DNA of 64,000 nt from Guillardia theta CCMP2712 (taxonomy: Eukaryota; Protista; Cryptophyta). Below, piece by piece: positions 25,516-33,443 of this stretch. Within the stretch, counting starts at the first letter, position 1, and each line of letters opens with the position of its first letter. Under the pieces are notes generated by a model, which saw only the letters and a list, made by a program, of their open reading frames with translations, searched no databases and was not told the origin of the DNA. The DNA lies in the NCBI RefSeq assembly GCF_000315625.1, contig NW_005434635.1:124001-188000 (forward strand), read 5' to 3'. Both the position numbers and the translations under genes were made by a program.

Positions 25516-27445
25516 ATGAGGACAACATGCAGGGAAGGAGACAGCTCGTCAGACCGGCCTTGTCACTCAACTGGGGTGATGCGCAATGGAGCGAACGTTG
25601 AAGAAGTAGCACCTCATGATGAAGACTTGAGGGAGGTGCTGAAGGAGATAGGAGCCGAGCCTGTCTACCAGGTGGCATACACTGTCACCTCCCTCGCCTC
25701 TCTCCTTTCCGCTCTTGTGAACTCTGGCTGGTGCAGGACCTGAAGGATGCTTTTGTCGACTTGGACGCCCTTGCCCTCATGTCCGAAGAGGACCTGCGGT
25801 CTCTCGGCATCCCGCTGGGACTTCGGGTGAAGCTCCTGGCATGGATCAGGTCTTCTTCCATCAGGAGGAGATCTCCTTGCTGTGACTGCCCTGTGCTTCT
25901 CCTGCAGGACCGCGGGGTCACACCAGGGGAGGAAGATAGCCCATGAAGATTCTGACATTGTGTCGGATGTATCTGACGCGGGGGAGGAGATGTTGTGCTG
26001 GAACATGGAGTCTTATGACGATGTGCTCCTGCTACAGAAATCAAAACCAAACCTAGTGAGCCCTACTGTCTTCTTTCCGCTCCTTCCCCCCCCGATCCGA
26101 CTCCCTTCCTCGCTTCCGACCCCTCTGCTCCCAGACCTTCTTGCTCGTGACTTTCGATGTCAAGCTGCTGGACCTCAAGACTGGCGAACTTGGTCGCTAC
26201 ATCAACTCAGAAGCAGCTGGACATGCTGCTGGAGATGGAGATAAACTCTTCAACATCTTGATGGCCAAGGTATGGAAGCTGGGTGACTGCCTTGTCCTCA
26301 CTCTATGCAGGAAGGTCGATCGTTCATGCTCGCTGTAGCCGGCTGCTCGCCTCCTCTACACATCGTCGGGGTCTCTGTGGAGGAGGCATCAGGCACAGGC
26401 AAGTTCAAGACCTCCCTCACCTACTCTCAGGCAAGTACTTCCCACCTGCCGGAGTCACTTCCCTTGCCTTCCAGTGCCTCCCCTTTGTCACGCACTTATG
26501 CTATCTCCTGCTCCGCGTCTGAGTTGATCGTGTAGAGGAAAGTCCTCACCGAGCTCTGCAAGAGCGTCTGGGGCGACCCCGTGCTGCCTCCGCCAGCAGG
26601 CACCAGACGTGAGCCGGCGAGTCCAGATGAGGAGAAGGGAGGGAGGAGCCCGAGGATGAACTTCGATGGCTTTGGTAGACAGGAGGACATGGGGGGAGGG
26701 TTGAGGAAGCGGGTGCTTCAGCAGAGCCCTCTGATCGCAGTGTTCGACAACATCTGCTCTCCCGCCCTCCACCGCGCGGTATGCCAGGTCTTCAAGTCTC
26801 CGTCAGTCTGGACGTGGGGGCACACGTCCAGCGGGGCAGGGGAGCTGAGCGAAGCAGACTCGCTCTTCTGGAAGTGCAACCAGAGCTCGTTGGAGGAGGA
26901 GGAGGCCATTCGGCACCTCAGCGCCATCGTGCTGGATCTATGCTCGCATGCTACTGGGAGGCCGCTCTTGATCCAGCGGGTCTATGCCAATGGGCACACG
27001 TTCGGTCAGGGAGGAAACATCCATGTGGACGAGACGGGAGCTGAGAACTACGCGGCAATCTACTACTCCAACGAGGAGTGGCGGTCCCACTGGATGGGCC
27101 ACACCTTCTACTTCCCCGGTGATGCCGTTGACATCCGTGACGCTCCCGAAGAGCTTGACGTCGCTCTTGCTGTCCTTCCTAGACCGCGACGGTACAGTCA
27201 CACATAGCATGGAATGTGCTGACGCTCCTTTTCAGGCTCGTGCTGCATGACGGGCGGCAGGTTCGCTCGCTCGTGCATGGCTTGTACTGCTCGAGCTGAC
27301 TGGCTGGCAGGCACATCTGGGAAGTGCTCCACATCGAAGCTTCCGAGGGTTGCGGGTCAGGAAATATCGAAGTGGGAGAGGAGAAGCTGAAGCAGCGCAG
27401 GTGACCCTTGCGTGGAAGTTCGGAGTGAAGCAAGACGATGAATGA
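25516..27445 (+). CDS. SAM domain plus unknown middle domain plus 2OG-Fe(II) oxygenase, multi-exon
   Basis: SAM: VDLDALALMSEEDLRSLGIPLGLRVKLL. Oxygenase: RVYANGHTFGQGGNIHVD...WRSHWMGHTFYF...LVLHDGRQAHLGSAP...LRVTLAWKF (HxD...H...R). Confidence 0.75.
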
Positions 27446-27658
27446 TGAGCTCGAAGGAGGGAGAGAGGTGAGTGTAGAATTAGCAAGGAGGTGTGTAGAA
27501 GAAGAAAGCACTTGCAGTATCACGACTGGAGAGTTGAGATTCAGTTATGTTTAATCTTGCCAAGTGAAATCAACATCTGCAATAATAATGCAACAGAATA
27601 TCAAAAACAATATCTTGATGCAACGATTTCAAAATCTTAAGGGGGTCCTCGATAAATC

Positions 27659-29450
27659 TCAACAGTCGTCATGCGAAATCGTATCATACTGCACTGATCG
27701 TCGTTTTCTTCTGTAGATCAACACAAGGGCGACCATGCAAAGGTTGAAGATGACAACGCCAGCAGCAAACTTCGTGTTGGTCACGCCAGCAAGCGGAAGA
27801 GTCGCGGTCGACGAAGATTTCTGCTCGAGCATGTAGAGGCTCGTGGAGATCATATCGTCGGGCAGCTGAGCTCTGATCGACATGGGGAGGTCATGCTTCA
27901 CCACGAAGACGCCAAAGACAGCCGATCCGGTGTCGAAGATGACGGTGAAGGGCTGTTTGGGGGTTCCGACGCCCACATCCATGAAGTACTGAGTTCCCTT
28001 CTTGTTGAAGATCGGGATCTGATCGACCTGAGTGAGTCTCTCCGTGTGCTCCGCCGGGAACATCGTCTCCTCTCCACGCAGAAGCTGGAGCTTGGTGATG
28101 GGAGCATGGTGAAGTTCGAAGGCACCGAGCTGAGGGTTCCTCACAGGGTTGTACTTCAAGTTGAGAGGAGCAATGCCGATGATCGGCCTCTCCCTTTGCG
28201 TCATGTCGAACTCAACCATGAAGGATCTGAAGAACACGTCTCCGATGAGAAGTCCTTGCATGCCGGCGGGACTCGGTTGCACGCAAGTCTGGTTGGTACG
28301 TGCCAAGAACCATGAGGAGAAGGGAACCTGCCACTCTCTTCCTCCGATTCCGAGCCAGAAAGACTTGCCCTCCTCCCAGAGATTCGTGAAGTCATTGAAA
28401 GGAACGTTCCTCAGCTTCCCGCCCAGGGTGTCGCCCGGCATCACCAAGCAAGAAGTTCCACTGTCCATGATGGATGGAAGGTAAGGCTCGTCCATCGGAT
28501 CGGAGAACTTGAGCAGCTCAGTAGAAGTGTCGTACGATTGTCCGAACCTCAGGGAAGTCACCCCAACGATGAAGTCGTTCTCCGATAGACAGGGAGTGTA
28601 CCACATTTCCCCCACGGTAGTGGAGGGATCATACCCTCCCAGCTGAACCTCAGCTGTAGAAGAGCGTCAGCGGAGGTCATGGAAGAAGACTTGACGTACC
28701 ATCAATGTCAGTGGAGAAGAAGGAAAACTTCCTCGTCAGGTCCCTGGCGTTGGACATCTTGTTCTCCTGGTCCGTCATGGCGAAGAGAATGGGGGTAGGA
28801 AGCTCCCTGCCCTCCTCGCCCGACTTTGGAAGACCAAAGCCAAGGATTCCATCAACACCGTTGAAGTCGGGGCTGTTGCAGTCCGTGATAACACCGAAAG
28901 GAGCAGTGCACTTATAGTCTCCGAGCTGCGGGTTGAGTCAGAAACCAGCTATGTAACTGACCAGCTATCCTACCCAGACTTGGTCAACACCGTTGAATCC
29001 TCTCAGATGAGATCCATCAGCATAGTGAAGGTCAAAGACCTGCCATCAGAAGTCATGTACAGCACGGCAAGGCCATCATCCGCTTCCATAAAACTCCTCA
29101 GACTGTTCCGATATGGCACCTCACACAAATCTGCTAGACGCCTACGAAAGATGCAACAGACTCTAACGCAAGTCTCACAACCGTTTCGATCGCATTGTAT
29201 GCAATCTTTCCATCCACATACTACCCAGCAACTTGTCTCCACAACCATCCCTGTCTGCCTCCACCAACCCACACACTCACAGTCAAACACCCTGCAACTG
29301 GCGTCTTACCTTCTCTGTGATGGGATTGAAGGTCGAGCTCTTCGTTACATCGAAGTGCCTCGACTGTTCTGGCTTGTAGGGCGTGTGAAAGCTTGTTCCT
29401 GCTCCCACCAGCCCCACCAGCACCAGCGCGCGTACCGTCCCCCTCGCCAT
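27659..29450 (-). CDS. Pepsin-family (A1) aspartic protease, circularly permuted, with signal peptide and C-terminal TM anchor
   Basis: Motif order: signal peptide, HFDVTKSSTF, LHYADGS, DGILGFG, IMDSGTS, LLIGDVFFR, IGIAP, then QYFMDVGVGTPKQPFTVIFDTGS, TM helix, RRKRR..YDTI. Confidence 0.85.
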
Positions 29451-30185
29451 GGCTGGTGCCTCTTCGTAGAAAGGCGCACCGTTACAAAAGTTACGTATTC
29501 GTTACTGTACGTTACAACAGTGCTCTGAAAACGTTATTAGACGTTACATATCATCAGGATTCTCGCTCTATTTCGGATGGAAAAGTGAATATGTACCCCT
29601 ACCCCCTCTATCATGATAGATTATGTGGAAGTACCCATGATTTTATACTGATATGTGAAGGATATAAGGGGGTACCAAAAGTACCTACCCCAGGATCCCC
29701 CTTTCAACATCCCCCACCCCTACCCCAATGACCGAGAGTCGCGGGATGATGCTGTGGCGGGGGACAGGAGAATGCGAGAGATGGAGCAGAGCGGGAGCAG
29801 AGGGAGCGGCGAGAGGAGGAGGACGAGAACAAGGACAAGGACGAGAAAAGTGAAAGATATCAAGGAAGATAGCTGGGTGAAACGTGCGAGGACCCGAAGG
29901 CACTGACAAAGTGTCGTTTGAAGGAGTAGAGAAGAAGAGAGGAAAGAATTAGACGAGGTCTGAATATGGTTGAATGCTCATAGTTGTATCATATTCGTGC
30001 ATACGATAATGCAACAGGATGTAGGCAAACGCATCAGCTATGAGATGCTGGTTCCAAATTTCGTTGGCGGGCGGTAACTCTGATTGCTCAGGATGTCTCA
30101 TGAGGAACATGAAATGGTGGACGAAACAAGAAACCGAACAACCCAAGCGGAACGAACTGCATGCATGCGCCGTGCTTGCAACGTG

Positions 30186-30952
30186 ATGTCAACATGCTCT
30201 ACCGCCTTCGTTGTCGGTGAGATGGTCGTTATGACATGACATCGTTAATAACCACTGTTACAGGCGCGATCATGCTACTTCACATTGGTTGTGTGGCAGG
30301 AAATCCCAACGACAAGCTTCAGACTGCAATTCATGCGAAATCTGCTCCTTCCTCCGCTGCTGAAGTTGCTCGGGAGATATCGGCGAAAGCACAGAAACTG
30401 CAGAGCGAGATCTCGAGCATCCATGCGAACATGGGGAGCGCAGACGACAAGTTGAACTCGATCAAAGAGCTCAAGTCAAAGCTTGCGACCAAGACTGTGA
30501 AGGGCAACGAGTTGGCCGATGCAGAGGTCAGCTTGCAGCAGCATACGATGAAGGTTTGTTCTGAGAGTTTTGACAGGAGAAGGTGCAAAAGATGAAAGCA
30601 GCAGTTCATGCAGCTGCCATGATCAAACAGAACGCCATTCATCACCTCGCTCTGTCTCACTCGGCTGGACCTCGCAACACAGGTAGGACGAACGCGATGG
30701 ATAAGGGAAAGGGCTGAGAGGCTGTGCAGGCGGCCAGCCTATCTACCCCAAGAAACTCACGCTACATGCGAGTGGATTGTTCGCAGACGGGCCTTACGTC
30801 ATCATGGGTGAGCGAACTCAATGCTGATGAGATGTTTACCTGACAAAGAGGTTTTTAGCCGTGCTGGCCACAATCCTCCTCACCTTCTGCTTCTGCGCAT
30901 TTTCTTCTCGTCCAACGTCGATGAGCGGCAAATACGACATGCGGCGATAGGG
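30186..30952 (+). CDS. Small secreted coiled-coil hypothetical protein, multi-exon (ends approximate)
   Basis: Hydrophobic AIMLLHIGCVAG followed by a helical K/S/A-rich ORF (30236-30595). Downstream GT-AG introns. Confidence 0.45.
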
Positions 30953-31172
30953 CAGAGTTTCCTCGGTAGCTTGGAAGCGATTGAATGAACTTGTCTGAAA
31001 CGGAGAAACGATCCATCACTTTCCGCATGTGTATGCAAAGGAGGAAAGGCAAGGGCAAGATTCACCCACTGAACAAAGAGGATTGATTAACAGTCTCAAT
31101 GAAGTTTCCCAAGTGCTACTTTAACAAATCTAGTTGCTGAATGAATACTTTGCTACCAACAGCCTTCACTCC

Positions 31173-33443
31173 TCATTGCAAGTGAGGCATGTGCACACTG
31201 ACTGGCAGCTTGTTGAAGTTCGTGATCCTGCCCTGTGGCATCCTCAACTTCTCCTGCAAGGGAAGGTTAGGAGGGACAAGACATATCCGACTTTCAGGTT
31301 ACACACCATGGTGTTGTGGCTCCCATCGGCCCTCACAGCTGAGGCCTCAGTCGACTTGTCCTGGATGGTGGCCTTGGGAGCTCGTCGCAAGTTCTTCCAC
31401 GTTCTCCCCAGCTTCCTGTCCTCCTTCGCGTCCTGTCAAAGCTTGTCAACGGACCATCAAACGCACGGAGACCCTTCGTCACCTGATGAGCGCCAAGGGG
31501 GATGGCAATGCGAGCAACGGGCGCGTTGGGGTCCTTAATGAGAGCTCCGTCGTCCAACAGCGTCGCGTCTCCCTTCGCCTGCTGGACTGAAGCAAGGCTC
31601 GCCTTGGGGAAGGAAGTGAAATGCTGATTGTTGCTGAACGAGGACGAACTCTGCGAGCTTTTGGTCGCTGCTGATGAGCTGCAGACGTAAGAATGTCAAG
31701 GATCGGAACGAGGGAAAATCAAGGTATGGAGAAGGAGGTTGAAGATATGGGATACCTCACGGCCTTGAAGTCTTGATCAACAGAAGAAATATCCACACCC
31801 GTCTTCTTCGCTTGCTTCATCAACGAGCGAAGGTTTGAATCAATCTCGCTATGCAAGGCACTGTCTTGCACATTGTTGGCGGAAGCCTTCACTTTCTTTT
31901 CATGGTTCAAAGCTGCAAGCTCCTGATCTGCTTGCTGCATAACACGAAAAATGGAGGATTCTTGATTATTCTTCTCCTTGGGTGCCTGCTTGGTGTACTT
32001 GCTCGATGTCTGAGACAACTGAGTAAGTCCAGCCTGCTGTGCCAACTTGGATGTCCCCGTCTGCTTGTACGAAGGGCTTGTGAGAGAGTCAAGAGTGCGG
32101 AAGGGAGCGTCGTTCATGAAGAGCGCTGGGTCAACCTCAGGTAGATTGCTCGCTATGGGGGGTTTCTGCCAGGTGCCACTAACCAAGCGAGGGCCTGGGG
32201 CAGCAGCTTCCTCCGCGCTCTTCAACCGGTTGAGGGTTGACATGTCATCACTCAAGTTATCTTGGAGAGAGGAGGTGTAGTACTGCATCGCCGAGCTGTA
32301 GTCTCGGTCCTTGGCTGCTCGCCTGACAGCCTCATTGGCCCTCATCTGCGATTCAGCCTGGGCAGCGCGCTGCCAGGCAGTCTGACCCTGCGAGGTGAGA
32401 TCTGCCAATCTCTTGAGCTCGTACTGGGCGATGGCATCCTGATTCTGCACGATGATGCGGGCCTCCCTGGCTCTCTGCTCCGCGATCTGCGCAGTCCGCA
32501 TCGCCGCACGGATCTGACGGGCAGATGAAGTTGCCTCTGCGCGATTCAACCTCAAGGAATCAGCGTACAGGGCATCCTTCGCCACCTTCGCAGCAGTCGA
32601 CTGCCTCTGGAGCTTGAGGGCTGAGAGGATGTCCTGCTTCTTGTTGGACAGAGTGCTGAGTTCCGACTGAAGGCCATTGAGTTGAGTCGTAGTCATCGTA
32701 CTCAACCCGGAGGCATCCTGCCTTGTGGTGGAGGAGTAAGTCTTGGGCAGGTTCTCGAGAGAATCTAAGGTGTCGTAGTTCGCTAGATGCCCAGTGTGCA
32801 ATCCAAGAGGATCACCGCTGCTGAAAGTTCCAGAGTACAGACCCTGAAGTTGTGCCTGGTCCAGATGAGCAATCTCCTTGGCCTGCTTGGCCTCGTCTTC
32901 GGAGGACTTGATCAACCTATCATACTTGTTCGCCGCCAACATCTCGGCTTGAGCAATCTTGCCGTACTTCTGTGCCCGCTGTCCTGGATGAAGAATGCTC
33001 TTCAAGGCAAAATCGTTGTCCATCTTCATTTCGTTGTTGTCGAGCGAGTAAAGGGCTGATGCTCTCATTCCAAGGTTGGTGGTGGTCAAGACTACCACTA
33101 CGGTCAGAGCCATGACTGCCAGAGCAGCCAACGAAGCCATCTGAACAAAGAGTCAGGGTAACACAGAACAGAGCAAGAATGACATGCACTGATCAGCCAT
33201 ACCTGGTAACGAACACGCTTCATTCCCTCCACTCCTCCTTGCGGTATGGAACCATCTGAAGATTATCGATGAGCAAAAGTAAATTCATCCTCCCATCCTC
33301 CCATCCTCCCATCCTCCCATCCTCCCTATATCCTCAACTGTCCAACCTTATCCTTTCATCTCTTGCATTGATCTAACCTCTCCTCCTCCCTCCTCCTCCC
33401 TCTCCTCTTCTCTCCTTGATCACTTACACTCCAAAGATCCCAT
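31173..33443 (-). CDS. Type II membrane or secreted coiled-coil hypothetical protein, multi-exon
   Basis: Spliced N-terminus MGSLEYGSIPQGGVEGMKRVRYQMASLAALAVMALTVVVVL, a 473-aa main ORF, and three more 3' exons to the stop at 31173. Confidence 0.7.
33285..33325. repeat. (CATCCTCC)x5 intronic tandem repeat
   Basis: Directly visible. Confidence 0.85.

What the first reader, a model, noticed from the sequence alone, without database searches (positions are those of the whole stretch)
27659..29450. Circularly permuted, membrane-anchored pepsin-family protease
Seen: the signal peptide runs straight into HFDVTKSSTF and the flap motif YADGS. The C-lobe follows (DSGT at about 28455-28465, IGDVF, IGIAP), and only after it comes the segment that normally opens A1 proteases, QYFMDVGVGTPKQPFTVIFDTGS (Asp codon 27932-27934). 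A TM helix and a YDTI (YxxPhi) tail end the protein. Known: A1 proteases have the order propeptide - GTP..DTGS - flap Tyr - D(T/S)GT. Inference: both catalytic aspartates are retained in swapped order, with new termini in the loop after DTGS. The linker (HAPITKLQLLR...) resembles the first strand of a pepsin propeptide, so the zymogen may carry an internal propeptide and mature into two chains, with one catalytic Asp tethered to the membrane. Tandem duplication followed by trimming would produce this order.
Basis: partly seen in the sequence, partly recalled or inferred. Interest (0 to 1): 0.85.

Follow-up and report, generated by a model that had tools for sequence, protein, structure and literature searches.

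The report
Circularly permuted membrane-anchored pepsin-family protease
This expressed gene of the cryptophyte alga Guillardia theta encodes a pepsin-type protease whose first ~45 residues, carrying one of the two catalytic aspartates, sit at the end of the chain next to a membrane anchor. The same rearrangement is found in every ordered pepsin-type gene of this genome and in several distant protists, and I found no published description of it.

Summary
A four-exon minus-strand gene (29450..27659, GT-AG introns) encodes 475 aa. The order is signal peptide, HFDVTKSSTF, flap YADGS, C-lobe DSGTS, end of the normal fold (IIGIAP), a 44-aa linker, the normally N-terminal segment with DTGS (Asp codon 27934-27932), a TM helix and a basic tail with YDTI.

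- **Transcript.** Spliced transcript contigs from three studies show exactly these three introns. There is no upstream exon and exon 4 is unspliced.
- **Not an artefact.** 19 of 22 pepsin-family (A1) loci in this genome (Guillardia theta CCMP2712) have the same reversed order, 3 are partial and none is canonical. So do relatives in Hemiselmis, Hanusia, Rhodomonas and Baffinella, and outside cryptophytes in Ancoracysta twista and Andalucia godoyi.
- **Structure.** An AlphaFold model of an 81%-identical orthologue is confident. Its residues 24-309 superpose on pepsin 47-326. The C-terminal DTGS piece docks on the body and touches the DSGTS loop (score 0.79, best control 0.02).
- **Origin.** On a tree, permuted and canonical proteins separate on one fully supported branch, which fits a single origin.

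The scan had already noted the same thing on two paralogues in this genome. I found no paper describing it.

The parts
27534..29504 (-). Transcript extent: the 5' end lies between 29450 and 29504, and the poly(A) site is at about 27534
   Evidence: Depth is zero in 29505-29671 in all four runs. A loose T-run at 27534 in the raw RNA-seq run X22 marks a poly(A) tail on the minus strand.
29310..29450 (-). Exon 1: Met1, a signal-peptide-like hydrophobic N-terminus (aa 1-20) and HFDVTKSSTF (aa 32-41, corresponding to pepsin ~53-62)
   Evidence: An in-frame stop lies upstream of the ATG. The intron 29309-29040 is confirmed by joints in X1 and X6.
28974..29039 (-). Exon 2: flap hairpin with Tyr53 (YADGS, 29024-29010), corresponding to pepsin Tyr75
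   Evidence: Y53 is at least 90% conserved in alignment A1. The intron 28973-28926 is confirmed.
28700..28925 (-). Exon 3: the rest of the N-lobe body, including DGILGFG (28853-28833)
   Evidence: G95, I96, G98, F99 and G100 are invariant. The intron 28699-28654 is confirmed.
27659..28653 (-). Exon 4: a single unspliced exon from the interlobe strand through the C-lobe, linker, N-type DTGS piece, TM helix and tail to the stop codon
   Evidence: The X6 contig covers 27545-28653 with 0 differences and no internal joint.
28451..28465 (-). Second-lobe catalytic motif DSGTS (Asp208, corresponding to pepsin Asp215)
   Evidence: It is invariant in A1 and lies in the predicted interface with the DTGS piece.
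28034..28165 (-). Linker of 44 aa (aa 308-351) joining the normal C-terminus of the fold to the normal N-terminus. It contains the conserved AP..KL...RG
   Evidence: pLDDT 59-74. Linker length in the family ranges 24-151 aa with a median of 47. Homology to a propeptide is not shown.
27899..28033 (-). Relocated N-terminal segment (aa 352-396, corresponding to pepsin ~1-44) with GTPKQ and the catalytic DTGS (Asp385 codon 27934-27932, corresponding to pepsin Asp32)
   Evidence: Pfam profile 1-45. P0002 358-393 aligns to pepsin 5-40; pLDDT 84-97; it docks on the body.
27710..27775 (-). Transmembrane helix (aa 438-459), after a 41-aa spacer (27898-27776)
   Evidence: hydropathy 2.49 over a 19-aa window; helix 436-463 in the orthologue model. 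69 of 88 complete family members have a TM helix here.
27662..27709 (-). Basic cytosolic tail RKRRSVQYDTISHDDC with the YxxPhi motif YDTI (27688-27677)
   Evidence: YDTI is kept in orthologue P0002 but not in P0006. A YxxPhi motif occurs in 26 of 69 tails in the family.

Best explanation
The gene encodes a functional, single-pass type I membrane protease of the pepsin (A1) family whose chain is circularly permuted.

After the signal peptide, the chain starts at the position of pepsin residue ~47. It runs through the flap, the rest of the N-lobe and the whole C-lobe (Asp208 in DSGTS) to the normal C-terminus. A ~44-aa linker then leads back into the normally N-terminal strands, which carry the first catalytic aspartate (Asp385 in DTGS). 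About 40 residues later the chain enters the membrane and ends in a short basic cytosolic tail with a tyrosine sorting motif.

The relocated piece inserts into the N-lobe as in pepsin, so the two aspartates face each other across the cleft under the flap tyrosine. Catalysis should therefore be the ordinary general acid-base mechanism (inferred).

The arrangement arose once, most simply by tandem duplication and fusion of a canonical gene followed by loss of both outer ends. It then radiated, and it is the only form of A1 protease detected in Guillardia theta. The lumenal or extracellular orientation and the YxxPhi tail suggest action in the endolysosomal or secretory system (inferred, not tested).
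For: - **Gene model and expression.** Canonical splice sites and an intact frame. Three independent transcript assemblies show exactly these joints, with exon 4 unspliced and no coverage upstream of 29504. Raw RNA-seq shows a poly(A) site at 27534.
- **Order.** Pfam Asp positions 1-45 lie after the C-lobe. By phmmer against PDB, P0002 355-392 aligns to the renin and pepsin N-terminus, and 33-182 aligns to renin 107-251.
- **Fold.** The AlphaFold model of orthologue P0002 (81% identical over 474 aa) has pLDDT 83.2 and pTM 0.78, and the DTGS piece reaches 84-97. Model residues 24-309 superpose on pepsin 47-326 with Z 22.8 and rmsd 2.1 A over 252 residues.
- **Docking.** The split-chain test, body 22-312 with piece 345-400, scored 0.79 against a best control of 0.02. 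That mark was reached by 51 of 78 solved complexes and 2 of 108 mismatched pairs. The runs agree in at least 93% of contacts and the partner pLDDT is at least 71. The interface includes 207-212 (DSGTS) and 364-398, which holds DTGS.
- **Conservation.** D208-S212, D385-S388, G374, P376 and Q378 are invariant, and the flap Tyr53 is at least 90% conserved, across 39 relatives. Of 88 complete members, 68 have DSG+DTG and 17 have DTG+DTG.
- **Family.** 19 of 22 A1 loci of this genome are permuted and none is canonical. Of the best 150 clusters in 1.84 billion proteins, 61 are permuted, 76 are fragments, and the only canonical call is an assembly artefact. Named members come from cryptophytes, Ancoracysta twista and Andalucia godoyi.
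- **Single origin.** 47 permuted and 28 canonical cores separate on one branch with SH-aLRT 100.
Against: - No enzymatic activity, localisation or mature protein has been measured for any member.
- The structure and the docking test used an 81%-identical orthologue, not the window protein itself. No model coordinates were available, so the Asp-Asp distance was not measured. The docking pass may partly reflect the model's memory of pepsin folds.
- The canonical set in the tree is narrow, mostly cathepsin D/E-like proteins. The rearranged cores could add a junction artefact, and the tree came from a quick search.
- Three loci in the genome are partial, so the absence of a canonical A1 gene is a lower-bound statement.
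- YxxPhi is present in only 26 of 69 tails, so the sorting inference is weak.
Confidence: 0.85

Rival explanations
1. The linker is an internal propeptide that blocks the cleft. The zymogen activates by cutting the linker and matures into two chains, with the chain bearing Asp385 tethered to the membrane.
For: - The linker holds a conserved AP..KL...RG motif.
- In a greedy profile alignment this motif falls on the v-k-v-P-l-x-K first-strand motif of canonical propeptides.
- The two parts are predicted to associate without a covalent link.
- In the natural tandem-fused A1 protein P0357, the C-lobe of copy 1 runs straight into the propeptide of copy 2, so a propeptide-derived linker is what duplication and trimming would leave.
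Against: - The linker alone against canonical propeptides scores 9.6 (E 0.065), no better than a reversed control at 9.56.
- Pfam A1_Propeptide does not hit any of 39 members, even at E 10.
- AlphaFold places ITKLQ in a short helix at pLDDT 59-74 and models the mature-type N-terminal strand (351-362) already in place.
- Linker length varies from 24 to 151 aa across the family.
Confidence: 0.2
2. The protein is a catalytically inactive pepsin-fold receptor or binding protein, like TAXI-type xylanase inhibitors or pregnancy-associated glycoproteins. The permutation would be tolerated because catalysis is no longer needed.
For: - No activity data exist.
- Some distant members have degenerate motifs, such as DSAT in Andalucia godoyi; 2 of 88 members have no D[TS]G in the C-lobe.
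Against: - Both D[TS]G[TS] motifs, the flap Tyr, GTPxQ and the hydrophobic-Gly motif are invariant or nearly so across 39 relatives that share only 37-87% identity.
- 86 of 88 complete members keep both Asp motifs.
Confidence: 0.08
3. The order is an artefact: a mis-assembly, two tandem genes read as one, or a decaying duplicate.
For: Assembly artefacts of this kind do exist in the databases. P0215 is a perfect double copy of a canonical cathepsin-D-like ORF and mimics the order.
Against: - Transcript contigs from three studies match the genome with 0 differences across the C-lobe, linker, DTGS piece and TM helix, and carry the predicted splices.
- The frame is open throughout.
- The same order is found in 19 other loci on other contigs, and in transcriptomes and genomes of other genera.
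Confidence: 0.01

Closest known systems
Pepsin, renin and cathepsin D/E (MEROPS family A1, Pfam PF00026)
   Same: It has the bilobed fold (Z 22.8, rmsd 2.1 A to pepsin). It keeps both D[TS]G[TS] motifs, the flap Tyr, GTPxQ and the hydrophobic-Gly motif. Pfam Asp scores far above its cut-off.
   Different: The chain order is 47-326, linker, 1-44, instead of 1-326. There is no N-terminal propeptide. The Cys45-Cys50 loop at the breakpoint is gone. A TM helix follows the relocated piece. Identity to solved A1 structures is about 20%.
BACE1/BACE2 (memapsins) and other membrane-tethered A1 proteases such as plasmepsin V
   Same: It is a type I topology with a lumenal A1 domain, one C-terminal TM helix and a short cytosolic tail with a sorting signal. 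BACE1 is among the PDB sequence hits.
   Different: In BACE the TM helix follows the C-lobe, and the order is canonical with an N-terminal propeptide. Here the TM helix follows the strand after Asp32-type DTGS. There is no specific relationship: the permuted family is a separate clade.
Swaposin (plant-specific insert) of phytepsins
   Same: It is the one textbook circular permutation associated with A1 proteases (PMC3320104; PMC8683733).
   Different: There the permuted unit is the inserted saposin-like domain, not the protease fold. The protease part of phytepsins has the canonical order (C-A-B).
Tandem-fused canonical A1 protein P0357 (metagenomic, 763 aa)
   Same: It contains the stretch C-lobe, propeptide, N-terminal DTGS piece in one ORF. 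That is the architecture of the presumed intermediate.
   Different: Both copies are complete and canonical, with halves 83% identical. It is cathepsin-D-like and not a member of the permuted clade. A chimeric contig cannot be excluded.

Membership tests
Peptidase family A1 (pepsin-like), Pfam PF00026 | Sequence match above Pfam's gathering score | tested here: met
   Exon-4 ORF: 57 bits against a cut-off of 19.9. Orthologue P0002: 100.6 bits.
Peptidase family A1 (pepsin-like), Pfam PF00026 | Two catalytic Asp in D[TS]G[TS] motifs, one per lobe | tested here: met
   DSGTS at aa 208-212 and DTGS at aa 385-388. Both are invariant in 39 relatives.
Peptidase family A1 (pepsin-like), Pfam PF00026 | Flap hairpin with conserved Tyr (pepsin Tyr75) | tested here: met
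   YADGS at aa 53-57. Y53 is at least 90% conserved.
Peptidase family A1 (pepsin-like), Pfam PF00026 | Bilobed pepsin fold | tested here: met
   Model of the 81%-identical orthologue: residues 24-309 on pepsin 47-326, Z 22.8, rmsd 2.1 A. This is a prediction, not an experiment.
Peptidase family A1 (pepsin-like), Pfam PF00026 | Canonical chain order: propeptide, DTG segment, flap, D(T/S)G segment | tested here: not met
   The order is flap, DSGTS, linker, DTGS. The same sub-HMM test returns the canonical order for cathepsin D/E, phytepsins and others.
Peptidase family A1 (pepsin-like), Pfam PF00026 | N-terminal activation propeptide (Pfam A1_Propeptide in animal members) | tested here: not met
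   The signal peptide runs directly into the position of pepsin ~47. There is no A1_Propeptide hit anywhere in the protein.
Peptidase family A1 (pepsin-like), Pfam PF00026 | Pepstatin-sensitive acid endopeptidase activity | not testable with these tools
   This needs a recombinant enzyme assay.
Memapsin/BACE-type membrane A1 proteases | TM helix directly after the C-lobe of a canonical-order domain, with specific sequence relationship to BACE | tested here: not met
   The TM helix follows the relocated N-terminal piece. The permuted family is one clade apart from the canonical proteins sampled, SH-aLRT 100. BACE itself was not in that tree.
Permuted A1 clade (cryptophytes, Ancoracysta, Andalucia; unnamed) | Order flap, C-lobe, linker, DTGS piece, then a C-terminal TM helix, with breakpoints at pepsin ~44-47 | tested here: met
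   The window protein nests with Hemiselmis and other orthologues inside this clade.

The most novel reading that the evidence does not exclude
The permutation is functional rather than a neutral rewiring. Placing the psi-loop that carries the first catalytic aspartate on a separate module next to the membrane, behind a cleavable propeptide-derived linker, would create a two-chain enzyme. Its active site would be assembled, or held apart, at the membrane. That would be a new way of regulating a pepsin-type protease, and it could explain why this form fully replaced the canonical one in cryptophytes.
Probability: 0.15. Interest if true: 0.85.

Novelty: new variant of a known kind. Interest (0 to 1): 0.68.

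Why it matters
Pepsin-family proteases are among the most studied enzymes, and their chain order (DTG segment, flap, second D(T/S)G) is treated as invariant. A natural, conserved and expressed circular permutation would matter for four reasons:
- It shows that the fold tolerates moving the strand that bears a catalytic aspartate to the other end of the chain. The breakpoint lies inside the N-lobe, not between the lobes.
- It is a rare case in which a permuted form has apparently replaced the ancestral one in a whole genome (about 22 genes), and it spans deep protist lineages.
- It offers a test bed for the duplication-and-trimming model of permutation, and for how zymogen control works without an N-terminal propeptide.
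- Sequential domain models report these proteins only as generic "Peptidase A1" or "hypothetical protein", so the rearrangement is invisible in current annotation.

Tried and rejected
- **Upstream exon.** I laid reads over 27000-32000. No joint leaves exon 1 upstream and coverage is zero in 29505-29671. The genes at 30091-31008 (+) and from about 31010 upward (-) are separate transcripts with their own poly(A) ends.
- **Assembly error or fused genes.** Rejected.
- **P0215 as an evolutionary intermediate.** Rejected. Its two halves are 100% identical, so it is an assembly artefact.
- **Propeptide homology of the linker.** Pfam gives no hit. hhalign on the linker alone scores the same as a reversed control. 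This stays inconclusive and is not used as support.
- **Search with the Andalucia protein alone.** It found only itself and one weak hit because of the word-index cap. A profile of divergent members worked better.
- **Literature.** Five full-text searches on circular permutation or permuted order with aspartic protease, pepsin-like, peptidase A1, Guillardia and cryptophyte terms found nothing on a permuted A1 protease; the only related hits concern the swaposin insert. The 2026 CIRPIN survey of circular permutations mentions aspartic proteases only through a swaposin reference. Subscription journals are not covered.
- **Direct measurement of the Asp208-Asp385 distance.** Not possible, because model coordinates are not exposed.
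- **Folding the window's own spliced protein.** Not done.
Full report
**1. The observation**

The region holds a minus-strand gene of four exons: 29450-29310, 29039-28974, 28925-28700 and 28653-27659. All introns are GT-AG and the CDS is 1428 nt, encoding 475 aa. An in-frame stop lies upstream of the ATG.

The order along the protein is as follows:
- a hydrophobic signal-like N-terminus (aa 1-20);
- HFDVTKSSTF (aa 32-41);
- the flap YADGS (aa 53-57);
- DGILGFG (aa 94-100);
- DSGTS (aa 208-212, 28465-28451);
- IGDVFFR and IIGIAP, which close a normal A1 domain (aa 281-307);
- a 44-aa linker (aa 308-351);
- the segment QIPIFNKKGTQYFMDVGVGTPKQPFTVIFDTGSAVFGVF (within aa 352-396, Asp385 codon 27934-27932);
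- a 41-aa spacer, a TM helix (aa 438-459) and the tail RKRRSVQYDTISHDDC.

Pfam's Asp model matches the exon-4 ORF with profile positions 1-45 lying after the C-lobe. In the full-length orthologue P0002, residues 29-299 match profile 41-309 and a second stretch matches the start of the profile.

**2. The transcript is real and has no other 5' exon**

I laid reads on window 27000-32000. Spliced contigs from three studies (X1, X2, X6) have joints at exactly 28654-28699, 28926-28973 and 29040-29309. These read CT..AC on the plus strand, which is GT..AG on the minus strand.

One X6 contig of 1538 nt covers 27545-28653 and 28700-28925 with no differences from the genome; by its length its remaining 203 nt should be exon 2 and most of exon 1 (those pieces were not among the listed rows). 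Exon 4 has no internal joint, so the C-lobe, linker, DTGS piece and TM helix are one continuous coding stretch in the mRNA.

Depth is zero in 29505-29671 in all runs, and no joint leads upstream from exon 1. Raw RNA-seq (X22) gives a poly(A) site at 27534. The next genes upstream are separate transcripts: a plus-strand gene ending at 31008 and a minus-strand gene beyond it.

**3. It is a family trait, not a peculiarity of one locus**

The window is G000:C39:124001-188000 of an 87-Mb genome in 669 contigs. The genome is Guillardia theta CCMP2712. GUITHDRAFT_161360 (P0146) matches locus L002 at 100%, and its contig length equals that of C9.

A six-frame Pfam search of the genome found 33 Asp matches at 22 loci. 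I built three sub-profiles from the family alignment (flap part, C-lobe, N-type piece). With these, 19 loci show flap, then C-lobe, then N-type piece along the coding strand. Three show only partial matches, and none has the canonical order.

The same test returns the canonical order (N-piece, flap, C-lobe) for cathepsin D/E, phytepsins, and oomycete, diatom and fungal enzymes. This serves as a positive control.

Outside the genome:
- All roughly 55 full-length relatives from the first search have DSGT about 170 residues before GTPxQ..DTGS.
- A profile search of 1.84 billion representatives gave 119 clusters at E <= 1e-30 and 5322 at E <= 1e-3.
- Of the best 150, 61 are permuted and 76 are fragments. 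The single "canonical" one (P0215) is a perfect double copy of one ORF, an assembly artefact.

Named members are Guillardia theta, Hanusia phi, Hemiselmis andersenii and H. tepida, Rhodomonas and Baffinella frigidus. Beyond cryptophytes they include Ancoracysta twista (P0179) and the jakobid Andalucia godoyi (P0233, ANDGO_05950). The latter two have the same plan: signal peptide, H.TY.P..SS-type start, flap Tyr, DS[GA]T, a long linker, GTP/GNP..VDTGS and a TM helix.

Sources annotate these proteins only as "hypothetical protein" or "Peptidase A1 domain-containing protein".

**4. Structure**

The window's spliced protein has no single reference. I therefore folded P0002, its orthologue at 81.4% identity over 474 aligned residues with identical motif positions, using a 39-sequence alignment.

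The model has mean pLDDT 83.2 and pTM 0.78:
- The relocated piece (350-400) scores 84-97 and forms four strands (351-362, 366-373, 378-385, 391-394). These correspond to pepsin's N-terminal strands ending at Asp32 and LWVPS.
- The linker scores 59-74.
- Residues 436-463 form a helix.

VIA-align places model residues 24-309 on pepsin 47-326 (Z 22.8, rmsd 2.1 A, 252 aligned). A sequential alignment therefore leaves pepsin 1-46 uncovered. By sequence, P0002 358-393 aligns to pepsin 5-40, so Asp385 corresponds to Asp32. The breakpoints fall in the loop at pepsin ~44-47, the place of the Cys45-Cys50 loop.

Coordinates are not exposed, so I tested packing by splitting the chain: body 22-312 with piece 345-400 as partner.
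- The score was 0.79 against a best control of 0.02. The mark was reached by 51 of 78 solved complexes and 2 of 108 mismatched pairs.
- The runs agree in at least 93% of contacts and the partner pLDDT is at least 71.
- The confident interface includes body residues 207-212 (DSGTS), 94-100 (DGILGFG) and 144-150 (interlobe strand), against piece residues 354-361 and 364-398 (containing DTGS).

This is what completion of a pepsin active site requires. It supports that reading but does not prove it, and it may partly reflect memory of pepsin structures.

**5. Is it likely to be active?**

In 39 relatives sharing 37-87% identity with P0002, the following are invariant: D208, S209, G210, T211, S212, D385, T386, G387, S388, G374, P376, Q378, and the glycines of the hydrophobic-Gly motif. 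Y53 is at least 90% conserved.

Of 88 complete permuted proteins, 68 have DSG+DTG, 17 have DTG+DTG, and 69 have a TM helix after the DTGS piece. 63 have a hydrophobic N-terminus. This pattern indicates purifying selection on a working two-aspartate site.

The basic residues after the TM helix fit a type I orientation. YxxPhi is present here and in P0002 but in only 26 of 69 tails, so endolysosomal sorting is a weak inference.

**6. Origin**

I re-ordered the cores in a script (N-piece placed in front) and aligned them with canonical cores. The 47 permuted and 28 canonical representatives separate on one branch with SH-aLRT 100, and the trait needs one change on the tree.

Ancoracysta, Andalucia and unnamed metagenomic lineages branch near the base of the permuted side. 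The cryptophyte genes form a large radiation, in which the window gene groups with P0002 and Hemiselmis.

There are caveats. This was a quick search, the canonical sampling is narrow and mostly cathepsin D/E-like, and there are some long branches. Shared breakpoints and the shared TM position argue independently for one event.

A 763-aa metagenomic protein (P0357) is a tandem fusion of two canonical copies that are 83% identical. The C-lobe of copy 1 runs directly into the propeptide (GIVRMPL..) of copy 2. This is the architecture that duplication and trimming would start from, so the route is plausible, although P0357 is not an ancestor and could be a chimeric contig.

**7. The propeptide idea**

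The linker carries a conserved AP..KL...RG motif. A permissive profile alignment drops it onto the canonical propeptide's v-k-v-P-l-x-K. The idea does not hold up further:
- The linker alone scores 9.6 (E 0.065) against propeptides and 9.56 against the reversed control.
- Pfam A1_Propeptide does not hit any member.
- AlphaFold gives ITKLQ a low-confidence helix, with the mature-type N-terminal strand already in the sheet.
- Linker length varies from 24 to 151 aa.

I treat internal-propeptide autoinhibition and two-chain maturation as open, at about 0.2.

**8. Comparison and novelty**

By fold, motifs and Pfam score this is an A1 protease. It fails the family's canonical chain order and lacks an N-terminal propeptide. 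It works like a membrane-tethered A1 enzyme such as BACE, but it is not a BACE relative, and its anchor hangs from the other end of the fold.

The known circular permutation linked to A1 proteases concerns the swaposin insert, not the protease (PMC3320104, PMC8683733). Five full-text searches and a check of the 2026 CIRPIN survey found no description of a permuted A1 protease. Journals outside the library cannot be excluded.

The scan itself has already flagged the same arrangement on two paralogues of this genome. Those are s1-445486, which is the locus I call L018, and s1-436885, whose follow-up reached the same reading. This report agrees and adds:
- the RNA-verified model of this locus;
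- the genome-wide count;
- the non-cryptophyte members;
- the tree;
- the docking test;
- the negative test of the propeptide idea.

**9. Verdict**

This is a new variant of a known kind. It should surprise specialists in aspartic proteases and protein-fold evolution, and it is readily testable.

Noticed in passing
Genome-wide: L001-L025 (G000 contigs C8, C9, C11, C15, C19, C21, C26, C28, C34, C39, C40, C48, C55, C56, C59, C82, C91, C111, C219, C226): All 22 pepsin-family loci of the genome were checked. 19 are permuted, 3 are partial (C9:1007403, C19:210072, C56:101584) and none is canonical, so the alga appears to have no ordinary-order A1 protease at all.
   Followed up: yes
P0357 (metagenomic protein, 763 aa, contig 2508 nt): This is a single ORF with two complete canonical cathepsin-D-like copies that are 83% identical. 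The C-lobe of copy 1 runs straight into the propeptide of copy 2. It has the architecture expected of an intermediate on the way to a circular permutation. A chimeric contig is not excluded.
   Followed up: partly
P0215 (metagenomic protein, 704 aa): This is a perfect (100% identical) double copy of one canonical A1 ORF. It is an assembly artefact that scores high against the permuted profile and could mislead automated surveys for permutations.
   Followed up: yes
window 26581-27540, + strand: A convergent neighbour gene has three short introns (27191-27234, 27256-27305, 27355-27399). Its 3' end abuts or overlaps the protease's 3' UTR, and one transcript contig (X2, 2998 nt) runs across both genes. 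Its ORF has an H.D...H pattern reminiscent of 2-oxoglutarate/Fe(II) oxygenases, which I recalled from memory and did not test.
   Followed up: no
window 30091-32000: A second convergent gene pair lies here. A plus-strand gene has four introns of about 50 nt and a poly(A) site at 31008. A minus-strand gene has introns at 31253-31305, 31432-31481 and 31679-31755. Assembled contigs merge the two, as with the pair at 27000-27540.
   Followed up: no
window 29012-29337: A low-depth X1 contig (depth 56, against about 4500 for the spliced form) covers exon 2 and most of intron 1 unspliced (the listed piece ends just short of exon 1). It is probably pre-mRNA or intron retention.
   Followed up: no
L001 (G000:C15:748232-752050), 776-aa ORF: This paralogue is the best Pfam Asp match in the genome. 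It has a much longer linker, about 270 aa between DSGT and DTGS. Ancoracysta twista P0179 likewise has about 150 aa. The linker therefore tolerates large insertions.
   Followed up: partly
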